Origin: Guillardia theta CCMP2712
Lineage: Eukaryota; Protista; Cryptophyta
Direction: 5' to 3'
DNA: 64,000 nt
Assembly (NCBI RefSeq): GCF_000315625.1
Contig: NW_005434641.1
Coordinates: 139,113-203,112, forward strand
Part shown: piece by piece, positions 1,653-41,315 of the stretch
Layout of the letters: every line of letters starts with the position of its first letter
Position numbering within the stretch: position 1 is the stretch's first letter
Notes under the pieces: generated by a model
What the model was told of the DNA's origin: nothing
Seen by the model: the letters and a program-made list of their open reading frames with translations, nothing else
Database searches by the model: none
Program-made: the position numbers and the translations under genes

Positions 1653-2549
1653 ATGTTCCCTGACAGAAGCAAGTCCGCAAGGGTGAACCCACCCAACAGA
1701 AGGCAGGTTCCGAGATGGCTGCCTGCTTCATACACCAGACACGTCTTCTTGAAGAACCATCCAGTCGAGAAAACAGACGCACCTGGTCCTGGAACATATG
1801 ATATCTTGACTGTAAAACGGAGCCCTGCTGATTTCCGGCAACGAAAACCGATCGAGAAGAGTAGGAGCGTCGATGTGCTGAGCAAGCTGCCATTTCGAAG
1901 GACAAAGAAGCTGCACGCAAAGAAAGATAGGAAGAAGCACAACCATGGAGATGCCGTCAAAATGCCAAAGCTCAAGATGGAAGCCATTCGGAAGCTCAGG
2001 ACATGGGATTTCTTTCTTGACGAATGTGCCGACGTGATCAGCATGCTGAACACACTGCGAGAAGAGAATAAGGATGACATCAATTATGTGAAGAGACTTC
2101 AACTGAATGCAGTCGCGAGAGGCTCAACGAGAGCTGCTCAATCTTGGCGGCCAAGATCATATTGCACTTTGAATGATCTCGGGGACATAGATACCGTGAC
2201 GAACCGACAAAAACTCCTTGACTCCCTTGATCAGACCAGCAGATCTGTCGTCAACAATTTGTTTGTGAATGCCGACCCAGCATTCAAGCTGCTAGGTATA
2301 CACGATGACTGCAATGAGCTTCAGTTCGCAGACAGCATGCTCAGCGTGCAGGTCAACTTTGATCCAGCAGAATTGTTGCTACCACAGTCAGTGAGGAGTA
2401 GGACTCAAAATCTAGAGAGCGTGGAGGAGACGGAAGTCCAGCCCGGTCGGAAGTCAACCGGTCGCCCTGTGGCAAAGGATCGTCAGCCGCATGATTATCT
2501 TGAGATGGATGAAATAGTTGAACGGTTTGCAGGCCATAGTATCCGGTGA
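1653..2549 (+). CDS. Hypothetical protein with one PGPGxY (SHIPPO/STPG-like) motif; short upstream exons likely
   Basis: 298-aa ORF containing APGPGTYD, a motif typical of flagellar PG-rich repeat proteins. Confidence 0.5.
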   Translation: MFPDRSKSARVNPPNRRQVPRWLPASYTRHVFLKNHPVEKTDAPGPGTYDILTVKRSPADFRQRKPIEKSRSVDVLSKLPFRRTKKLHAKKDRKKHNHGDAVKMPKLKMEAIRKLRTWDFFLDECADVISMLNTLREENKDDINYVKRLQLNAVARGSTRAAQSWRPRSYCTLNDLGDIDTVTNRQKLLDSLDQTSRSVVNNLFVNADPAFKLLGIHDDCNELQFADSMLSVQVNFDPAELLLPQSVRSRTQNLESVEETEVQPGRKSTGRPVAKDRQPHDYLEMDEIVERFAGHSIR

Positions 2550-2699
2550 CAGAGGAATAGAGGCAAGCGTTTCGACATTGCAAGGGATCTTTGAAATGCT
2601 TTGGTGCTGCTCCGTGAAGGTTGCAGAATGATTCGTTTTCTTTCAAAGTACCATTTAAAGTTATATTGACACACCCACTGATTGTTATACATAGCAACA

Positions 2700-3803
2700 C
2701 TCGATGCAGCTATCCAGGGCTCTGACCCTGAGCCAACCATGTCATGTCGAAGGAATCGGAATCAGAGAGGATGGGTCACCTCCTGGATGAGCTCAATACC
2801 TGCTGCCGGACCCAAACATTCCTCTCTTCATCGTATCTTTCCAGCACAAGAGCCTTGAAGCAGATGCTCACAACCTAGTCAAGCTGACAGCAAGATACCT
2901 TCTTTCCGACAGGAAAATCTTGGCAAGGCGGCTCAAGCTCCTGGAGTTTTCGCTCGCCATCCTCTTGGTGCGGTAGTGTCCATCGTTGTGCAATTCTTCT
3001 CGTCTCTCATGAGAGGAGCAACAACACGTTTACATTCCCTCACCTTCCACAAAAGCTGTTCTTCCCTGTTATCGACTCCAGACCTACCTGTTCTCAAACT
3101 CTCACACAACCCTTGTGACCTTCCAAGTTCGAGAGACTTGTTACCGGCTGCTGTACAGCAGAGGACGACTTCATGGGACTGAAGTAGCCCAGACCTGCAA
3201 TGAACCGAGATTATGACATGGAAGGGAGGTGCTGCACGAGGCACCAGCATAAACTGACGGCTCCATGTTAGAGCAATTATCGCCATCGGGTTCCTGTAGA
3301 TGAAAATGAGATGAAACCAGATAGTCCTCAAAGAAAGGTGTCTACCTCATGGTAGGCGTCTTGAATCAAGAAAAACCCTGAGTCATCCTGTCCGTTCCAG
3401 CTCACGTATGGAGACGATGCTCCTGAAAGCCTGCAAGCACTTCGATCAGCCAGAATGAAATGTGCCGTCGTTGTTGGGTGAGGATACATGACACTTCTCC
3501 ATTCTTCATCTTCCAAGGGTAATCTCCACATTCCTGCACTGCAACCAGTCATTGCAAGGCAGCACAACGAGCTCAAGAATCTCTCATTCGATGTCACAAT
3601 GGCAACGAGGCGATTGAGGAACGACTCAGCGTAATGATACTCGTCGCAATCTTCCTGAGCCTGCGCGTCCACCTTGCTCATCTGAGCCTTCTCCTCTTCC
3701 TCTACCAGAGCCTGCCTGATGGCGACTCAGCACATCACCCTCATCAGCATGAAGCCTATCAGCCTCACTCCCAGCCTCGAAACCCTCGCTCTTCCGTCTC
3801 TCA
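2700..3803 (-). CDS. Hypothetical multi-exon protein (boundaries approximate)
   Basis: ORF pieces 3328..3681 and 2933..3331 with plausible GT-AG junctions. Confidence 0.35.
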
Positions 3804-4992
3804 TGGTTTTGACTTCGGATCCCCCGGACCGTCATCGGAATCGCAAAAAAAAAGTAACTGACCGGACCCGGGGCCGGCGAGGCCCTGGCCGCCCGGCCCG
3901 GGAACTTGGCGTGTAGACTACTCAGTGGTACCGTGTAGTAGTCCTTCCGAAGTTCCAGGAGGAAATCAGTCCTTTACTTTAAATCAGTAATCAGCATCAG
4001 CACGTCCCGCCAAAGGCCTTTCTTCCCATCATCGCCAGCACTGATGGACTCTTGCTGGATGATGCCTTGCGCTTTCGGAAGTTCTGTGGAAGGCTGACCG
4101 CTGGGGGATCGCTCGGCGAACAGGGAAACGGCAGCGCTGGCTGGCCTCTCGGCCTCGTCCTTCGCTGCCATCATCGCGGGTGCATTCCGGTGTGCGTCTC
4201 ATTCCTTCGGCGGCGGCCCCAGCGACATCGCCGCGACATGGCGGGGGGCCCGGAATGGTCCTGCGTGCAGTCAAGTGAAGGTCAGTATCAGTTAAGTCTG
4301 GGGGACAGCAGTTGGCAGGATTGCGTTTGGTTCTCGCTGTCTTCTCTCTTCTCGCCGTTTGGCCTGTGCGGCGACAGTGGTCAAGCCTCCTCGACTCTCC
4401 TCATTGTCCTCGTACTGATCTTAAACTTAACTTTGAGTAAAAAGCATGATACTATTCAATTTCAATCCTGACTTGCGATCTAGTCATGCTGCACCACTAA
4501 GGTCAGCAACCTAACAAGTGTCTTCCTTTGGTCAGGATATCCATGGCGGCCTCTCCTCCTCTACCCCCGGACTCACTGGCATGAGAGCATCGGATACCGT
4601 CATCACATGGGATCATCGTCACCCTCCTGGCGTCAAGCTCGTTTATTACATGCCCGCTACCTCCATCTCTCCCTCCGCATCGCCTGTCTAGGTCTGCACG
4701 CCTGCCCGGGTCCTTGCACGACCAACGCGGTCGGGCGGGTGGAGACGTCGACAAGTGGGAGGCTCGCGGAGGCTCCGCCTGAGGGAGAGGAGGAGGAGGA
4801 CGGGTGGTAGGCGCCCGGCGACGCCCGGGGTCTCCTGCAGGGAGGCAGATGCGAGCTGCTGCAGGGCTGCGGAGACGTCCTCGCGGTGTGTATGGATGGG
4901 GTTAGAGGGGCGGGTGGTAAGTATTGGCTGTGGGGCTTGTGGACGGGTGTTGGGTGGGAGTGGAGCGGAGAAGGCTGCAGGGGAGGAAGACG

Positions 4993-5428
4993 CTAGGGCG
5001 AGGGAAGGGCCCACCTGCTGTCCTGCCAGCAGATGCGCTCTAGCCGGAGGATCGGAGCGTGCAGCCTGCGGACCGCGGAGACCATCTCCTCGTCGCACCT
5101 CAGGAGGCCCTCCTCCTCCAGGTCGAAGAGAAAGTCGATGATCTCCCCCAGGCGGGCGTAGACAGAGTGAGGAGCAGACCAGCTGTGCTTTCGCTCGCTA
5201 TGCACGATGTCGTGCTTGTGTCTCAGCACGAACTTGCGTAGCTCCTGCACCATCGCCAGCAGGGACGGGCGCTGGAGGGACAAGTAATGCTGGAGAGTCG
5301 GCATGTTGTCCGACCTCTGGGGGTGCGGCAGGGATCGCCAGTCCTCGTACGCGTCCATGAGGGTACCCCAAGGAGTATAGAGGGCGTCAAACAGGGAAGG
5401 CATCAGATCGCTGATGTAGGAGGGCATG
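4993..5428 (-). CDS. Hypothetical protein (MPSYISDLMPSLF...)
   Basis: Globular, helical-looking coding segment with GC3-rich codons between low-complexity flanks. Confidence 0.45.
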
Positions 5429-6077
5429 GCGTAGCGGCTCCCCTCCCCTCCCCTTTCCCTTATGAAGCCTTTCCGTCGTCCCCTGGTCGTGTTTGTGGGA
5501 AGCGGGGCGGGGTGGGGATATCCAGAAGGTGGGTGGAGGAAGGTCAGAAAGAGGGTCAAGCCAGGGACCGACACGGGGTGGGAGCTCTAGGGGGTGGGGC
5601 AGGACTTGTGGGGTGGTGGTAGGGAAGGTTTGTGGGATTGAGGGAGCATCCTTGGCGACGAGGAAACGTAGCGAGGAGCGAGGAGCGAGGAGCGAGGAGC
5701 GAGGAGCGAGGAGAGACTAGCAGGGAGAGTACAGCCAGACGACAGCAGCCAGGAGGGGTCAGCAGGAGGATGGGAGCAGGGAGCAGGGATATGGGAGGAG
5801 GGAGCAGGGAGCAGGAAGCAGGGAGGAGGGAGCAGGGAGCAGGGAATAGAAGCAAGGAGGGGGGAGCCAAAAGGGGAGCCAGCAAATGGCAGCAGGGTGA
5901 TGGTAGCAGCAACAAGCCAGCAGCCAGCACGGAGATGGCAGCAGCAACGAGGGAGGACCCTGCAGCAGGCAGAACCCATCAGATACCAGGCAGCCCGCAG
6001 CCAGGAGAGACAGGTCAGCGTGTCCCTGGCCATCTCATCCCATGGCTCTTCCATATCCCAAGACAAGCTGCAGATCT

Positions 6078-7577
<1,500 letters not shown>

Positions 7578-34291: not shown

Positions 34292-35822
34292 TGCCGCCGG
34301 ATGGAGATGGACACCTGGCCAGTGTTCGTTATGTGATCGTTACATAGTTCGTTATCACGACGTTTTAACGAGACCGTGCAGTGAGCGCCGGTTGCGCCGG
34401 TACCGTAGCCTTAAAAAGGCCCCGGCGAGGCCGGGCCGCGGTGTGACTCCCGTACGGTCCGATCCGATCCGATCCGGGCCGATCGGACGGGCGGGGTCGG
34501 GGCTTCTTCTTGCAAACTGCTGAGCGTCTCATTCGAATCCGAGTGCAACCCCATTTCTGACAGGCTCGAGTACCCGACGGTGCCAGTGACCGGCCGCGGC
34601 GGCCGCTCCCGCCCGGGCGGCCGGGCCGGACGGTGAGTCACTGTCAAGCCCGGCCGGGCACTGAGCCTCCGAGCCCCCCGGGTGTTGAGGCAACTGATCA
34701 GAGCAAGCCTCATGACCTCAGGTCATGTCAACTGAGCACTCCCGGAGGGCCGCCTGAGCCTCCGTCGATGACCGTGTGGCTCTGTGCCGCACTGACCGTC
34801 AAGCCGCTCACGGACTGAAGGACAGCAACAGCTACCAGGTTGAATAGGGACGGCGACGTAGGAGGATCACGAAGAAGACAGCAAGAATCTAGGACCCATG
34901 GAGAACAGCACTGATGTGACTGGCAGGAATAACGGCTGAGAGCAACTATGAGTCAACTCGACAGGAAGCGTTGGATGAGAATCGAAGACCGTCTCATCAT
35001 GTCAAGGCGGCCTATGACTCTCTCCACGGTGACTGCCGGGAGCCTCCAGGCTAATCAGTAGTCACGGTGATGGGGCTAGGACGGTCGGACTTGGACCGGA
35101 GTCCGATCGAAGGACCGTACGGGGCATCAGTACGGTAGTACGGTACTACGGTAGTACCGCAGACTCAGTACGAAGCCTTCTGGCAACATCGGCAGTGATC
35201 GCAAGTATCATCACCGTATACTCAGATACTTCAAGTGACTGTCTACTTCGTGTGAGGAGAGAGTTCCAATGGAAATCTCGACATATTCTAAAATTTTGGG
35301 CCGCAGCGCCTCACCGGGGGCCGGGCCTCGGAGTGCCAGATGCCTGTTCAACGGTTGTCATTTACATAACAGGCTTGTAATCAGTCACTTGAGGATATTC
35401 AGTCTCAAGACTTTGGGGATGTGACTTTGGGTGCGGCCGGGCTGGCGGGGCGGCGGGAGCTGAGCCAATCCGGCGAGCCCGGCCGCGCCGCGCGTTCCGA
35501 GTGACTGAAATGGCATTACCGGCCGCAGTGTGAAGGTGACTCAGACCGCGGACGGTGAAGTGACCCGGGGTGACTCCGGTGACTCTGGCGTATCAGCGGC
35601 CCCGCCGCCGACGGACTCGTGACTCGGTCCGTTTGGCGGGCCGGGCGCGGCCCGGCCGTCGACTCGATCATCGGATAACTGCATTGAACATCTTTGAGTA
35701 AAGAACATCATGGCCCGGTGTAGTTACTGCACGGCACGTTTTTAGTCTGAAACCTTAGTAGTCACCAGTACTAGTAGCTAAAAAAAGAAAGCGCATTCCC
35801 CCTTGACGTCTACGTGACAACG

Positions 35823-38800
35823 ATGTGGGGCTGCTCCTACTGCGAAGTGAGGAAACAGTCTGGCAGCGATGAGACGCTTGTTTGCTTGACCTGCACGTTT
35901 GATGGAGATGCTTTCTTTGCTCGTCTACACTCACATCCTCATATCATGCTCCTTCCGCTTCTGACTCGACAGGCTCCAGATTGGGCTCATTGGGCTCCAG
36001 TTTGGGCTCCATTCAAGTACCAACGACTTCACAACATGCGTAATATCAAGGGCTGCAAGGGGATCGATTTGCTGACATTCAATTGTCTTCATGGCGTTTC
36101 CACATGTGTGAATGGGCGAGATAGGCGGTAAGTAGTATCTTTATTGGAACTTCCCATTGTCTAGCTGACATGTATCTTCGCGTTTTGGCCGGTTTTCAAC
36201 CTGGATGGTCGTCGTGAATGGGACTGGATAGAGTGTAAGTTAAAATTTCGTCATAAGCATCCAGGGGATGATGAGACTGACATGTACTTGTGTTTTCATG
36301 GATGTTTCATCGGACGGGTCGTGAATAGCGTGTAAGTTATCATCATGACGATTTGGCTCGCTGAACTGTGGTGTTGCAATGTCTGTCGTTTGTCATCGGA
36401 TGGGCGATGAATTGGGCATGGCCAGCGGGTAAGTCAAGATCCGATAAAATGCGCGGTCAGGGGAGAATTAAACTGACATGTACTTTGTTTCATCGGATGG
36501 GTATGGATGGGGCTGGATAGGAGGTAAGCGAGCATGAAGAAAGATGAGTTAGAGATGGATAAGGACTGACATGCATTTCGCAAACTCCATTGTTTTGGCT
36601 TGAATGGGCCATGAATGGGGCTGGGCCGATGACAGCCGGTAATTGAGGAAGATGAAAGTTGTGCTCAACGATTGGCTGACGTGCTTTTGTTCTTTTCGAA
36701 AATGAAAATCGCTTCTGGCTGGAACTGGAAACAATTGACTGGATAGGGAGTGAGTAGCATTTGCAATGATGCGGTCATGTTTACATTGCATGTTTTTTCT
36801 TGAAATCTTCTTGTCTCGGTTCGCATGAAAACCTATGCTCCGGATAGTTTGTAAGTGCCTTGTTGAAAGAAACAGTATGCTGACACGTATCTTTGAATCG
36901 GTTTGGGGTGTGAATGGGGCTGGATAGGCGGTAAGTGAGTATGATGAACGATGCGTTGAGGAGACAACAAGCTCAACTGACATTTGATTTTGCTTTTTCT
37001 GTCGTATTTTCTGTCGCTTGGGGTGTGAATGGGGCTGGTTAGGAGGTAAGTTATAATCATGAAAGAAGCGGAACTGACGTAGTGTACTTATGTCTTTTCG
37101 TCGATTATTTGCGAATTTACTGTTGGTGGGGCTGGATAGAAAGTGAGAATCGCTCAGGGAGCCGTATGTTGGCTGACTTGTATTTTTGCAACTTCCTTCA
37201 CTTTGGGCTGCTCGGCTGAGGTGCGAATGGGGCTGGATAGTGGGTAAGTAGCGATGATGAAAGATGCGTTCACAGAACGATAGGGACTGACGTGTACTTG
37301 GATTGTGTATTTATGGGTTTCTCATCGAATTCATTGTTGGTGCGGCTTGATAGAAAGTAAGTGAGGACGATGAAAGATGCGCTCGGGGAAAAATGTTAGC
37401 TGACATGTATCTTTTCCATTCGGTTTGTTGCTGTCATGATTTGGGTTCTAGTGCTGCATTTGCTACCTCGACAATAGGTCTGAAGATGAAAGGCAAGCAT
37501 ACATGTGTCAGCACTGCAAGGATCGACGCTCGTGCATGCACAGCCTTGAGCAAGAACTTGCATCAGAAAGACCCAGCAGGCAGGACGCCATCGCTAAGAT
37601 CGAGGAGGTCCGCAAGCACGTTAACAACGTGGGAAAGCAGTTTGCCGGGAGACTGGACCTGGTCAAGTGTCATTACATCTTCGGTATGCAAGAGATAGAT
37701 ACCTCTGCTGTCGATGAAGTGAAGCAGCTTCTGTCTGGGGGGGAGCTCGGGAGCTGCTACAACAGCAAGGAGGGTGAGCTTGACATGTCTATCAAGACGG
37801 ACAGCATGACACGATATGTGATACGAGATCTGAGAATGAAGAGCCTGCCTCCCTGGATTGCCGATCTCGGCATCCCTCTTCGAATTATCAACGTGTCCGG
37901 CAACCCCAGCCTCTCTCGCGTTCCCTTGGATGAGCTGTGCAGCATGGAAGCTAGCCTGAAGGAGGTCAAATGTGAGAACTGTATCCGCCTACAGGTGCCT
38001 CCCCCCGAGATCGCCAGGCAGGGAGGGGCAGCTGCCCTCAGGTACCTGCAGAGTGTCAAGAGAGACGGCGAGGCGAACAAGCGGATCAACCTCGTCCTCA
38101 TCGGCAACGGAGAAGCAGGCAAGACGAGCGTCCTAAGAGCTCTGAGATCAGAGGAGGACAGGGCGGACAAGATCGAGGTAGACAGGAGGACGATCGGGAT
38201 AGACCTGCACGAGTGGAGGCCCGAGGACGCTGACGGGCTGACGTTCGACGTGATGGACTTCGGGGGCCAGCAGATCTATGCCAAGACGAACCAGTACTTC
38301 ATCGTGAGGCGGGCCTTGCACCTACTGGTGTGGAACATAAGGGCGAAGCGAGACGAGCAGAGAAGTGCAGACGACAGCGAGGAGAGCATGGAAAAGCTGA
38401 AGAAGATGATCTCTACATGGCTGCGAGCTACTCAAGCGCGAGTGCCGGGAGCGAGCATATTGTTGGTAGTAACGCATATCGATCTTGCGGAGGCAGGAGA
38501 GGTGGAGCAGCAGTGTGAAGAGGTGAAGGCATGCGTGGAAGAGGAGCTGAGGAAATTGGCAGAGGATGGAGATGAGAATATCCTGCCATTACATGTGATC
38601 AACGGAGGCAAAAGCGTCAGGGTGAATTGCCTTGAGGGAGAGGGGATCAAGGAGCTGCGGCAATTGGTGTGTGAGAACGCGAAAGAGCTGCTGTGGTGGG
38701 AGGAAAGAATTCCTCGATCTTATCTGAGACTGAGAGAAGCTGTGGAGAATCGAAAGTTGGAATCTGTTTCGTACCTCAAGGTAGAGGAGTACAAGAACAT

Positions 38801-41315
38801 GTTGGAAGAGTCAGGAGTCGTCGAGAATGAGCACAAGGTGGCGACAACCTTCCTGCACGACATGGGCGTGCTCAAGTACTTTGGTCATGAGCTGAGTCTC
38901 GATCATCGCAAGGCAGACCATGACAAGTACTCCGTCGAGGACACGGTCTTCATCGATCCCGTGTGGATGATCGACGTGTTCAAGGGCGTGATGCGACATG
39001 ACTGGCAGCACCTCCTTGACTTCTTCCAGCAGGACCCGACCAAGTCCAAGAAGACAAAGAAGCTGCTGCACCTGGGTATCATCGACGAAGTCATATTCGA
39101 GTACTTGTGGCCCCAGCAAGACAGCGACTTCTGGCGCGAGGAGAAGGCTGACAAGATATCAAGATCGGCAGAGGTAGGGTTCATCAAGAGCCATGTGGAC
39201 GTCAAGGAGGCGGTAGCTCTGCTTCGGGGCTGCGACCTGGCGCACTTCCTGGGCGAGGGGATGAACGACTTGAAGGATACAGACAAGAAGAGCAGAGAGC
39301 TGCTGTGTCCCGGCATCATCCCGTCGTTCATACATGAGCACAAGCGAGCAGTGACGGACAAGCAGTCTCTCTGCGCATCTGTCGAGTGCGAGTACAACAT
39401 CTTCCCTGCCGGCTTCATCGACAGGCTGGTCGTGCTGTGCGCTGCTCGACACTTTGAGGTAGACTGCAGCGGTACGATGGCGGTGATGAAGGGCTGGGGC
39501 CGGACGCTGCTGGTGAGCTGGCGGGAAGACAAGGACCAGCACGTGCTGATAGCAGATGCGTCGACTAAGCAGCAAATCAAGAACTTGCAAGAGGACTTGA
39601 AGCGACTAGAGGCTTTCTTCCCGGGGATGAAGCGGAGGAGATACGCAGACAAGAGCTCAGGCCAGGAGGCCGTACAGGTTGGGATCTTCACGCATGGCGA
39701 GAGCTCAAGAGAATGTGCGAGGGATATTGCAGGAAAGGTGAAGAACATTTACAACGCGGAGAACCTCCCTCTAGATCTTACTTGTAGGATTCATCAATGT
39801 GACAACAAGCATGGGGATGATGCTGATGAATGTCTTGTGAACATTTTATGTATATCGACAGAGTGTCTTGATGAGCAGGGAGCTATTCGAGCAGAAAGCA
39901 ACTTCTGCAAGCTATGGAACAGATTGACAGCGAGCAAAGCGGTTATCATCCCCGTCGTACTGACAGATTACTACGACGAGCAAATCAAGTCGAAGAACAG
40001 GTTCAACGAGTGGTGGCCGCAGGAGATACAAGGGATGGAGCGATACAGGATCTTCCACGCATACCAGGAGAACGATGAAGTATCGATGCGAACGTTGTAC
40101 GAAGGCATCATCAGGAAACTTCATCAGGGACGAGGAAGCTTCGAAGACTTGTACGACGTCACCAGTCAGAACGAGCTTCTGTGCAAAGATTGCTTACATG
40201 AGTCTCAACCTGCCTCCAAAGGCGATCGAACTGTTGGCACGTTTGATCTGTCGAAGATCAAGACGATGCTAGAAGAAGAAAGCAAGGGTATTGCAGACAC
40301 ACCGCAAGGGCTCGAGCAGGAAGATATCCTCAAATACAAGGTCATGATGAACACGATCAGCTGCACAAATGGTCATGAAACATCCGTCAAAGAGGTGCTG
40401 GCATTCAATGACTCTAGCTCCCCTTGTCCCCTCTGCTTGAAGGAGAAGAGACTCCCGCACTTCTTCAGCCGACCCAAGTGCTTGAGCATGCTCGCTCGCG
40501 ACCTGACGGCCAAGATTCGCTGCGACGGATGTCAGAGGGAGGTGGAGGTGCTGGACGTCACGCCGCCACAGGTGTTCTTGAGCTACCAGTGGGGGCACGA
40601 AAACTCGACGCAGAAGATGGTGAGGGAGGTGAAGCGGTGGATCGAAGAGCAGACAAGCTTGCAGTGCTGGTTCGACGTGGAGGGAGGGATCAACCCCGGG
40701 GAAGATCACATGCAGAAGATGGAGCTGGGAGTCTCGCGCTGCGAGGTGTTTGTGGTCTTCATGAGCGACAAGTATGTCAAGAGCGCCAACTGCAGGAGAG
40801 AGTTTGCTCGGGCGTGTGAGGCAGGGAAGTACATCATCCCTGTCTTGGTGCCGGTGCTGTTTGAACCAGGTCAAGACTCAGATCGTTTAGAGTCCGAGTC
40901 AGGCTGGAAGGGCGACCACAGGCATGCAGACGACTGGTGGAAGAGAGTTGCAGTCATCGAGGGGAGCGGAGGAGCTGTTCAAGAGGTCAAGGTCGATTGG
41001 AGGCGTCTGGCGGACTTCCCAAAGACCTTTGAGATTGGAGCAGAGTGGCTAGAGCAGCAGCAGCAACAAGACAAGGCCGAAGGCGGTTTGAACATTTCAA
41101 GGCTTGAGAAGCTGGTGGCAGCAGTGCAGGCAAGGGTCTACCGGGGAGGGGTCGTGTTTCACGAGGTTGCTTGTTTGGTTGTGGCTGACTTGGGCTTGAC
41201 ATGCGATGAGCAGCAGGAGAACTCATTGCTGAGGTCGTTACATCGCCAGAAGCATCTGTTCGACTGCATTCTCCGTCGTATCAACTTGATGCAGTCCAGA
41301 TTCCAGACGAAATGA
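35823..41315 (+). CDS. Roco protein: N-terminal Zn ribbon built from microexons, short LRR, Roc GTPase, COR, Cys clusters, TIR_2
   Basis: P-loop LIGNGEAGKTS, RTIGID, DFGGQQIY, LLVVTHID; COR FLHDMGVL and VFIDPVWM; TIR VFLSYQW, SDKYVKSANCRREF. Model: exon1 35823-35846, exon2 35973-36016, 13 microexons, main exon from 37478, small intron near 41166-41216. The 5' exons are predictions. Confidence 0.9.
36017..37477 (+). other. Array of 13 three-nucleotide microexons separated by related introns
   Basis: AG|NNN|GTRAG-type units at 36125 GCG, 36232 AGT, 36329 CGT, 36426 CGG, 36521 GAG, 36636 CCG, 36747 GGA, 36848 TTT, 36928 GCG, 37043 GAG, 37140 AAA, 37241 TGG, 37354 AAA. Confidence 0.85.

What the first reader, a model, noticed from the sequence alone, without database searches (positions are those of the whole stretch)
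35823..37502. Thirteen consecutive 3-nt microexons at the 5' end of a Roco-TIR gene: candidate splicing-based receptor diversification
Seen: between exon 2 (ends 36016) and the long Roco exon (starts 37478), the pattern YAG + exactly 3 nt + GTAAG/GTGAG/GTAAT recurs 13 times at 80-115 nt spacing. The triplets are GCG, AGT, CGT, CGG, GAG, CCG, GGA, TTT, GCG, GAG, AAA, TGG and AAA, and nearly every spacer has a CTGAC branch motif. Joining everything gives an open frame, MWGCSYCE-APDWAHWAPVWAPF-KRVVGSRDLRRNGK-SEDERQAYMCQHCKDRR, continuous with the 1270-aa ORF. About 1.4 kb of introns therefore encodes only 39 nt. Known: Roco and TIR proteins are immunity-associated; exon-level variation is described for brown-algal Roco LRRs and schistosome micro-exon genes. 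I do not recall a serial single-codon exon array in a Roco gene. Inference: independent skipping allows up to 2^13 = 8192 in-frame combinations, varying one peptide loop a residue at a time.
Basis: partly seen in the sequence, partly recalled or inferred. Interest (0 to 1): 0.95.

Follow-up and report, generated by a model that had tools for sequence, protein, structure and literature searches.

The report
Thirteen spliced one-codon exons, Roco-TIR gene
A receptor-like Roco-TIR gene of the alga Guillardia theta carries thirteen consecutive exons that are each one codon long, a layout that sister genes demonstrably splice into mRNA in order and that no paper found describes, but there is no sign that the cell mixes and matches these codons to diversify the protein.

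Summary
The 13 YAG+3 nt+GTRAK junctions exist exactly where stated. The 14 spacers are diverged copies (54% identity) of one intron that keep every GT, every AG, the 3-nt spacing, usually CTGAC, and an AG-free zone of about 59 nt.

The gene model needs three corrections.
- RNA contigs from two studies splice 37356 to 37452, not to 37478.
- Paralogue alignment puts exon 2 at 35980-36039.
This gives a 1328-aa open frame.

Public transcript-derived proteins of two sister genes contain their full microexon chains in genomic order, 11 and 13 codons. Across 149 triplets in 11 loci there is no stop codon, against about 7 expected.

At this locus RNA shows only the last junction directly, and intron 13 is retained. 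No isoform with skipped codons was seen anywhere, so the 2^13 diversification idea is unsupported.

This scan had already reported the same architecture on other pieces of this genome. No paper describing it was found.

The parts
35823..35846 (+). Exon 1, 24 nt: start codon and a CxxC motif (MWGCSYCE), donor GTGAGG
   Evidence: The ATG and CxxC align in 9 loci. The homologous exon of paralogue L012 is the start of transcript-derived protein P0029. It is in frame in the corrected model. No RNA from this locus covers it.
35847..35979 (+). Intron 1, 133 nt: GT..AG, CTGAC 14 nt before the acceptor 'ctccAG'
   Evidence: The acceptor is homologous to the paralogues' 'ctccAG|ATC', which is used in P0029. 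The AG at 35971-72 lies too close to the branch motif and would break the frame (inference).
35980..36039 (+). Exon 2, 60 nt, phase 0 (IGLIGLQFGLHSSTNDFTTC), ending ..TGC|GTAATA; contains a 9/12-nt in-frame tandem repeat
   Evidence: Alignment to the paralogues' exon 2 (..TNDSLKC|GTAATT); paralogue model verified; tandem repeat; frame.
36040..36124 (+). Intron 2, 85 nt: first unit of the repeated intron family (GTAATA..CTGAC..ATAG)
   Evidence: The homologous intron is spliced in P0029 but retained in contig L022.
36125..36127 (+). Microexon 1, GCG (Ala)
   Evidence: GCG is the first microexon in 8 of 10 paralogues and is spliced in P0029.
36232..36234 (+). Microexon 2, AGT (Ser)
36329..36331 (+). 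Microexon 3, CGT (Arg)
36426..36428 (+). Microexon 4, CGG (Arg)
   Evidence: The preceding intron has CTGAA instead of CTGAC.
36521..36523 (+). Microexon 5, GAG (Glu)
36636..36638 (+). Microexon 6, CCG (Pro), donor GTAATT
36747..36749 (+). Microexon 7, GGA (Gly)
36848..36850 (+). Microexon 8, TTT (Phe)
   Evidence: The preceding intron lacks a CTGAC motif.
36928..36930 (+). Microexon 9, GCG (Ala)
37043..37045 (+). Microexon 10, GAG (Glu)
37140..37142 (+). Microexon 11, AAA (Lys)
37241..37243 (+). Microexon 12, TGG (Trp); RNA contigs of two studies begin to fit the genome exactly here
   Evidence: X2 record 8 ends at 37241. X1 record 1 fits from 37241 and has 7 further letters that do not fit the genome upstream. 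Use of this acceptor is inferred, not shown.
37244..37353 (+). Intron 13, 110 nt: retained in the RNA contigs of two studies
   Evidence: Records 1 (X1) and 8 (X2) lie on 37241-37356 without gaps or other letters.
37354..37356 (+). Microexon 13, AAA (Lys); its donor is shown in use by RNA
   Evidence: joint 37356 to 37452, GT..AG, in X1 and X2.
37357..37451 (+).
   Evidence: Joint. The homologous acceptor lies directly before TGCTGC in all paralogues.
37452..41315 (+). Long exon: CCICY..CQHC cysteine-rich start, then Roc, COR-A and TIR_2, through the stop codon
   Evidence: CC[IV]CY is conserved in the paralogues.

Best explanation
The window holds a Guillardia theta Roco-TIR gene whose 5' part is built from two short exons (35823-35846 and 35980-36039), thirteen exons of exactly one codon each, and a 3.9-kb exon (37452-41315). 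All exons are in phase 0.

How it is spliced. The ~100-nt introns between the codons are diverged tandem copies of one intron. Each carries its own GTAAGT donor, a CTGAC branch motif unusually far (about 60 nt) from the acceptor, and no AG in between. Each intron is therefore recognised and removed on its own (intron definition). Each removal leaves one codon attached to the growing exon.

What it encodes. The codons encode a short linker (ASRREPGFAEKWK) between cysteine motifs of an N-terminal Cys-rich module.

How it evolves. The array grows, shrinks and changes by duplication or loss of intron-plus-codon cassettes and by point changes in the codon. Paralogues that are 93-97% identical in the long exon therefore carry entirely different linkers.

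Shown: the sequence anatomy; the last splice junction at this locus; complete ordered inclusion in two sister genes; selection against stop codons and against AG in the branch-to-acceptor zone.

Inferred: splicing of microexons 1-12 at this locus; the steric role of the distant branch point; the cassette-duplication mechanism; translation of the linker here.
For: - Thirteen junctions, against 7 in the rest of the + strand.
- The 14 intron units are only 54% identical pairwise, yet GT is kept in 14/14, AG in 14/14, the 3-nt spacing in 13/13 and CTGAC in 12/14.
- In 124 introns between adjacent 3-nt exons of 11 loci, the branch A lies a median 59 nt from the acceptor. That zone holds 5 AG in 5416 nt, against about 220 expected from its composition and 0.048 per nt in the 5' part of the same introns.
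- 149 triplets hold 0 stop codons in phase 0, against 6.7-7.5 expected (P about 0.001 or less). Phases 1 and 2 have 1 and 4.
- RNA contigs of two studies join 37356 to 37452 and begin to fit at 37241.
- Protein P0021 and its contig L022 carry the 13 triplets of paralogue L019 in order.
- UniRef proteins P0029 and P0031 match my exon model of paralogue L012 at 161/162 residues. That model has an ATG exon with a GC donor, exon 2, 8 microexons, an 87-nt exon, 3 microexons and the long exon.
- The corrected window model is a 1328-aa ORF without stops.
- The same layout occurs at more than 25 loci: 160 pattern hits against 26 in the control. They lie upstream of Roco-TIR, kinase, kinase-RING and kinase-caspase genes.
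Against: - At this locus no RNA covers 35928-37104, so microexons 1-11 and exons 1-2 are unproven here.
- The only contigs that reach the array retain intron 13. This puts a TAG directly before the last microexon and shifts the frame. The dominant assembled RNA in two studies is therefore not the productive form.
- Two introns (36332-36425 and 36750-36847) lack CTGAC.
- The window lacks the 87-nt CxxC..H..C exon present in several paralogues.
- The raw-read run X8 gave almost no reads.
- Runs X1 and X2 are only guessed to be RNA, although their zero depth over 1.2 kb of intron argues against DNA.
- No Pfam family matches the N-terminal module.
Confidence: 0.72

Rival explanations
1. In this particular copy the array is poorly spliced or decaying and acts mainly as a gate or untranslated leader. 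Most transcripts keep at least one array intron, which brings in stops or frameshifts. The protein is then made from ATG 37503 without the N-terminal module, or not at all. Slow serial splicing of the array could in this way hold down expression of a TIR-bearing protein.
For: - Intron 13 is retained in the assembled contigs of two independent studies.
- Contig L022 of a sister gene retains the intron between exon 2 and GCG while 13 later introns are removed.
- Unspliced pieces of paralogue introns appear as loose ends in X1 and X2.
- MMETSP peptides P0022 and P0030 and the public gene models start at MCQHC.
- Two window introns lack CTGAC.
Against: - The complete 1328-aa frame from the conserved ATG is intact.
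- All 28 splice dinucleotides and the 3-nt spacing are kept despite 46% divergence of the units.
- Fully spliced ATG-to-long-exon transcripts exist for a sister gene.
- The absence of stop codons in 149 triplets indicates translation.
- Contigs drop minor forms, so a retained form in a contig does not give the share of spliced RNA.
Confidence: 0.2
2. One reading: the 13 codons are cassette exons skipped independently, so one gene yields up to 8192 protein variants differing in one loop (splicing-based receptor diversification).
For: - In phase 0 every subset is in frame and free of stops, so skipping would be tolerated.
- X2's contig ends exactly at the acceptor of microexon 12. A branch in the assembly graph at that point would produce this (weak).
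- The host genes carry immune or cell-death type domains: TIR, caspase, kinase-RING.
Against: - All three transcript-derived N-termini found carry every microexon in genomic order.
- Searches for further isoforms found none.
- No joint that skips a microexon was reported at this locus.
- The observed diversity lies between paralogues, in the germline.
Confidence: 0.06
3. The region is one large intron (36017 or 36040 to 37451) that merely contains a tandem repeat resembling splice sites. The triplets never reach mRNA.
For: No RNA evidence at this locus for microexons 1-11. TRF does not even detect the repeat.
Against: - RNA contigs contain microexon 13 joined to the long exon, and microexon 12.
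- Splice signals, spacing and the AG-free zone are conserved far beyond the 54% background identity.
- Homologous arrays are spliced codon by codon in sister genes.
Confidence: 0.02

Closest known systems
Single 3-nt microexons of animals and plants (for example Drosophila homothorax micro-Ex8, PMC7392893; the 3-nt RPS24 microexon, PMC12207440; plant microexons of 15 nt or less, PMC8831610)
   Same: Exons of 3 nt flanked by canonical AG and GT are spliced into mRNA, add one residue, and are routinely missed by annotation.
   Different: Those are isolated exons, or clusters of two or three, of unrelated origin, and are often regulated cassettes. Here 13 (up to 31 at other loci) follow one another. 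They are separated by homologous ~100-nt introns and are included together in every full transcript seen.
Schistosome micro-exon genes (MEGs; from my own knowledge, DeMarco et al. 2010)
   Same: Most of a coding region is made of tandem symmetric (multiple-of-3) microexons. Skipping is frame-neutral. The genes form fast-evolving families.
   Different: MEG exons are 6-36 nt and encode secreted parasite proteins, and alternative skipping is documented for them. Here every exon is exactly 3 nt, the introns are copies of one unit, the hosts are intracellular Roco-TIR and kinase genes, and no skipping was seen.
Recursive splicing at ratchet points (Drosophila and vertebrate long introns; from my own knowledge)
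   Same: A 3' splice site is juxtaposed to a 5' splice site, so that after each splice a new donor sits at the end of the growing exon and the region is removed stepwise.
   Different: Ratchet points leave 0 nt (or a later-removed RS exon) and serve to remove one very long intron. Here each step leaves a coding codon and the introns are short. Retention patterns show no strict 5'-to-3' order.
Introner elements (intron-generating transposons of Micromonas, Aureococcus and others; from my own knowledge)
   Same: Many near-identical short introns in one genome, each carrying its own splice signals.
   Different: Introners are dispersed singly through many unrelated genes. This unit family gave 84 matches confined to about 20 array loci, always head to tail with 3 nt between copies. 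No terminal repeats or target duplications were looked for.
Exon-per-repeat LRR-ROCO genes of brown algae (Zambounis et al. 2012; from my own knowledge)
   Same: A ROCO family with immune-type domains in which short phase-compatible exons are duplicated and shuffled between paralogues.
   Different: There each exon is a whole 24-residue LRR. Here it is a single residue in a Cys-rich N-terminal linker, not in the LRR.

Membership tests
Microexon (exon of 30 nt or less, flanked by spliceosomal introns) | Canonical AG acceptor and GT donor on both sides of a very short exon | tested here: met
   13 of 13 sites have YAG|NNN|GTRAK.
Microexon (exon of 30 nt or less, flanked by spliceosomal introns) | The exon is present in mature RNA | tested here: inconclusive
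   At this locus the donor of microexon 13 is used, and the acceptor of microexon 12 is inferred from where the contigs end. Microexons 1-11 have no coverage. The feature is met in sister genes L019 and L012.
Microexon (exon of 30 nt or less, flanked by spliceosomal introns) | The exon is coding and in frame | tested here: met
   1328-aa ORF. 0 stops in 149 triplets against about 7 expected.
Alternatively spliced micro-exon gene (MEG-like diversification) | Transcript isoforms that differ by inclusion or skipping of individual microexons | tested here: not met
   P0021, P0029 and P0031 all carry the full chain. No skipping joint was seen and no further isoforms were found. The depth of sampling is small.
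Recursive splicing | Juxtaposed 3' and 5' splice sites that regenerate a donor after each step | tested here: met
   The sequence shows AG+3 nt+GTAAGT at each junction.
Recursive splicing | Stepwise intermediates and zero-length (or later removed) exon | tested here: not met
   The 3 nt stay in the mRNA. Partly spliced forms exist but their order is not 5' to 3'.
Introner element | Copies dispersed as single introns in many unrelated genes | tested here: not met
   84 matches in about 20 clustered array loci only.
ROCO protein | Roc GTPase domain followed by COR | tested here: met
   Roc scores 45.4 bits (cut-off 27) and COR-A 38.2 bits (cut-off 35.3). COR-B is below its cut-off.
TIR-domain protein | TIR domain above the Pfam threshold | tested here: met
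   TIR_2 scores 61.3 bits (cut-off 28) at residues 1024-1118 of the 1270-aa ORF. Catalytic residues were not examined.

The most novel reading that the evidence does not exclude
Tandem intron-plus-codon cassettes are a dedicated device of cryptophyte immune or cell-death receptors with two effects. First, they let the germline add, delete and rewrite single residues of a linker through unequal exchange between look-alike introns. Second, through slow or regulated serial splicing (retention or occasional skipping) they gate or diversify the protein within a cell population.
Probability: 0.12. Interest if true: 0.95.

Novelty: new variant of a known kind. Interest (0 to 1): 0.85.

Why it matters
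Exons of 3 nt are thought to be rare, isolated and hard to splice. A genome that routinely splices chains of 13 to 31 of them tests the lower limits of exon and intron definition. The uniform distant branch point and AG-free zone give a concrete sequence rule that can be tested in minigenes.

It also matters for annotation. The public models of these genes start at an internal Met and miss the Cys-rich N-terminal module.

It is also a natural case of codon-by-codon modular evolution in a family carrying TIR, caspase, kinase and RING domains.

Tried and rejected
- Tandem Repeats Finder does not detect the ~100-nt repeat, because the units are too diverged.
- Two exact-pattern scans of metagenome contigs gave nothing for this locus and only chance hits for the paralogues.
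- The raw-read RNA run X8 gave about 20 reads and no junction.
- Protein searches for transcript-derived N-termini of this locus found none. They found only three for sister genes.
- A conserved hairpin in the array introns is not supported here. Ten introns folded with z-scores from -1.3 to +1.7.
- Pfam finds no domain in the N-terminal Cys-rich module.
- The Introner (transposon) origin was rejected on distribution.
- I first took GCG for the end of a longer first exon, because contig L022 runs unspliced through the region. P0029 showed that intron is spliced, so GCG is a true microexon.
Full report
**Observation**

The region was read directly. A regex for [CT]AG + 3 nt + GT[AG]A[GT] finds 13 consecutive sites between 36122 and 37351, spaced 80-115 nt apart. 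The rest of the + strand has 7 such sites and the whole - strand has 10.

Cutting at these sites gives 14 spacers that align as copies of one unit. The unit runs GTAAGT, an A/G-rich stretch, CTGAC, a T-rich stretch, a G-rich stretch (GAATGGGGCTGGA), then TAG. Pairwise identity of the units is only 54% (range 37-74%). Tandem Repeats Finder misses the array for that reason. Even so, GT is kept in 14/14 units, AG in 14/14, the 3-nt spacing in 13/13 and CTGAC in 12/14. Neutral decay of a satellite would not leave this pattern.

**What gene it is**

- The ORF 37503-41315 carries Roc, COR-A and TIR_2 above Pfam thresholds.
- Its closest named relatives are hypothetical proteins of Guillardia theta CCMP2712. 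This agrees with earlier notes of this scan on the genome's identity.
- The genome holds ten paralogues. Every one has an array of 3-nt junctions upstream of a long exon that begins, directly after YAG, with TGCTGC or TGTTGT encoding CC[IVL]C.

**RNA at this locus**

Runs were found and laid on 35500-38700.

- X4 covers everything at low even depth and behaves like DNA.
- X1 and X2 come from two different studies. They have zero depth over 35928-37104 but cover the long exon, so they behave like RNA, although the tool only guesses so.
- In both, one contig lies on 37241-37356 without a mismatch, skips 37357-37451 (95 nt, GT..AG), and continues at 37452.

Four things follow.

1. The donor after microexon 13 is used.
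2. The acceptor is the TCTAG at 37451, the first AG after the branch motif.
3. Intron 13 (37244-37353) is retained in these contigs.
4. Both contigs stop fitting the genome exactly at 37241, the first base of microexon 12. X1 has 7 further letters that do not fit the upstream genome. This is what splicing at that acceptor would give, but I could not see those letters.

No joint that skips a microexon was reported. The raw-read run X8 gave almost nothing.

**Corrected gene model**

Starting the long exon at 37452 adds CCICYLDNR in frame. This stretch is conserved in the paralogues. It also puts the microexons in phase 0.

Aligning the upstream region with eight paralogues shows three conserved features.

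- A conserved ATG exon encoding M..CxxC, with a GT donor (here) or a GC donor (paralogues).
- An acceptor 'ctccAG'.
- A second exon ending ..TGC|GTAAT.

In the window these are 35823-35846 and 35980-36039. The first array intron is 36040-36124. The full model is a 1328-aa ORF with no internal stop, and the array reads ASRREPGFAEKWK.

**Proof in sister genes**

A protein search with the start of the long exon returned P0021, from a 1411-nt JGI contig, L022. It reads ..VIRKA-GHWFSEHFSYKPG-CCVCYYDD. The 39 nt between the two genomic blocks are the 13 triplets of paralogue L019, in order.

The cluster of P0022 holds two UniRef entries from the G. theta transcriptome, P0029 and P0031. Their N-terminus equals, at 161 of 162 residues, my exon model of paralogue L012. 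That model consists of:

- exon 1 (27 nt, GC donor)
- exon 2 (39 nt)
- 8 microexons
- an 87-nt exon encoding a CxxC..H..C motif
- 3 microexons
- the long exon

The layout, its phase, the GCG first microexon and an ORF starting at the conserved ATG are therefore shown for sister genes. The public genome models (P0001, P0003, P0024-P0028) start at the internal MCQHC and miss all of this.

**Selection signatures**

- Across 11 loci I collected 149 triplets. None is a stop codon in phase 0, against 6.7-7.5 expected. P is about 0.001 with a composition shuffle, and 0 of 5000 with a position-specific shuffle. Phases 1 and 2 have 1 and 4 stops.
- Third positions avoid C (7/149) and first positions favour G, as expected for bases that double as splice-site context.
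- The 124 introns between adjacent 3-nt exons have a median length of 104 nt. Where CTGAC is present (97 introns), the branch A lies a median 59 nt from the acceptor.
- That zone holds 5 AG dinucleotides in 5416 nt. About 220 are expected from its composition, and the 5' part of the same introns has 0.048 per nt.
- The one AG inside the zone of the window's last intron is the acceptor that RNA shows in use. This fits first-AG scanning from a distant branch point.

**Mechanism (inference)**

Short introns are recognised as units, so exon length is not limiting. With a 3-nt exon the acceptor and the next donor overlap. A branch point about 60 nt upstream keeps U2 on one intron and U1 on the next roughly 62 nt apart. 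That is beyond the ~50-nt steric limit known from vertebrate exon studies (my own knowledge).

Each splice leaves a codon and a fresh donor at the end of the growing exon. This works like recursive splicing but leaves a 3-nt residue. The partly spliced forms seen show no fixed order: window intron 13 is retained while introns 12 and 14 are gone, and L022 keeps the first array intron while 13 later ones are gone. No stable hairpin is indicated in the window's introns (z from -1.3 to +1.7).

**Evolution**

- Between paralogues the long exon is 93-97% identical in nucleotide and nearly identical in protein. The microexon chains differ in number (9-26 triplets per locus counted) and cannot be aligned.
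- The intron unit family is confined to about 20 array loci. It is therefore not a dispersed Introner-type element.
- A genome-wide pattern for three consecutive junctions gives 160 hits against 26 for the reversed control, on more than 25 contigs.
- Arrays with other intron sequences lie upstream of kinase, kinase-RING and kinase plus caspase-domain genes. One has 31 junctions with W/L-rich codons.
- Gain and loss of intron-plus-codon cassettes by unequal exchange is the simplest explanation. It was not tested.

**The diversification claim**

In phase 0 any subset of codons would be in frame and free of stops, so skipping is possible in principle. None was observed in three transcript-derived N-termini, in the contigs at this locus, or in two further protein searches.

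The variation seen in RNA is intron retention. Retention makes a non-productive upstream frame and leaves ATG 37503 as the first usable start. A gating role for slow array splicing is therefore a serious rival for this copy.

**Literature and earlier notes**

No paper in the library combines Guillardia with microexons. Papers on 3-nt exons describe isolated cases in animals and plants. Searches for consecutive or tandem microexons return only small clusters such as RPS24. Introner papers that mention Guillardia do not concern this.

This scan has already reported the same architecture at other loci of this genome. I re-derived it independently here from public proteins, and I corrected the model for this locus.

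Noticed in passing
L041 (G000:C116:128000-137999), locus coordinates 1874-5669: An array of 31 junctions of the same AG+3 nt+GT type whose codons are W/L-rich (ARPRKLWLWSLKRWLW...). It lies upstream of an ORF with a Tyr/Ser-Thr kinase domain and a C3HC4 RING finger.
   Followed up: partly
L043 (G000:C118:14500-24499), locus coordinates 2494-6648: A 12-unit microexon array is followed by a kinase ORF and then an ORF with a caspase (Peptidase_C14) domain. The same N-terminal module therefore seems attached to several different effector domains.
   Followed up: partly
L037 (G000:C33:45500-54500), same contig as the window but about 90 kb upstream of it: A 17-junction array with different intron sequences lies upstream of a kinase-domain ORF whose first exon starts NGCLSCK.
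   Followed up: partly
L012 3475-3561, L013 2750-2836, L014 3126-3212, L016 2097-2183, L021 1559-1645 and 3487-3573: A conserved 87-nt exon encoding a CxxC-x6-H-x6-C motif sits inside the microexon arrays of several paralogues (twice in L021). It is absent from the window's array.
   Followed up: partly
window 35972-36011: A 9/12-nt tandem repeat (ATTGGGCTC...) inside exon 2 expands it in frame to 60 nt, against 39 nt in the paralogues.
   Followed up: no
window 36040-37353, last ~20 nt of each array intron: The acceptors are preceded by a G-rich tract (GAATGGGGCTGGATAG) rather than a pyrimidine tract, which sits next to the branch motif instead. G tracts between the Py tract and the 3' AG are described as splicing silencers in mammals (PMC4320613, abstract only read).
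   Followed up: no
paralogue exon 1 (for example L012 2341-2367): The first intron of most paralogues uses a GC donor (GCAAGG), confirmed by P0029. The window's copy has GTGAGG.
   Followed up: yes
window 37208 and 37249 (loose ends): RNA-type contigs of X1 and X2 include unspliced intron sequence of paralogous arrays (for example the unit at G000:C150:7427). Intron retention or pre-mRNA of these arrays is therefore common in the data.
   Followed up: partly
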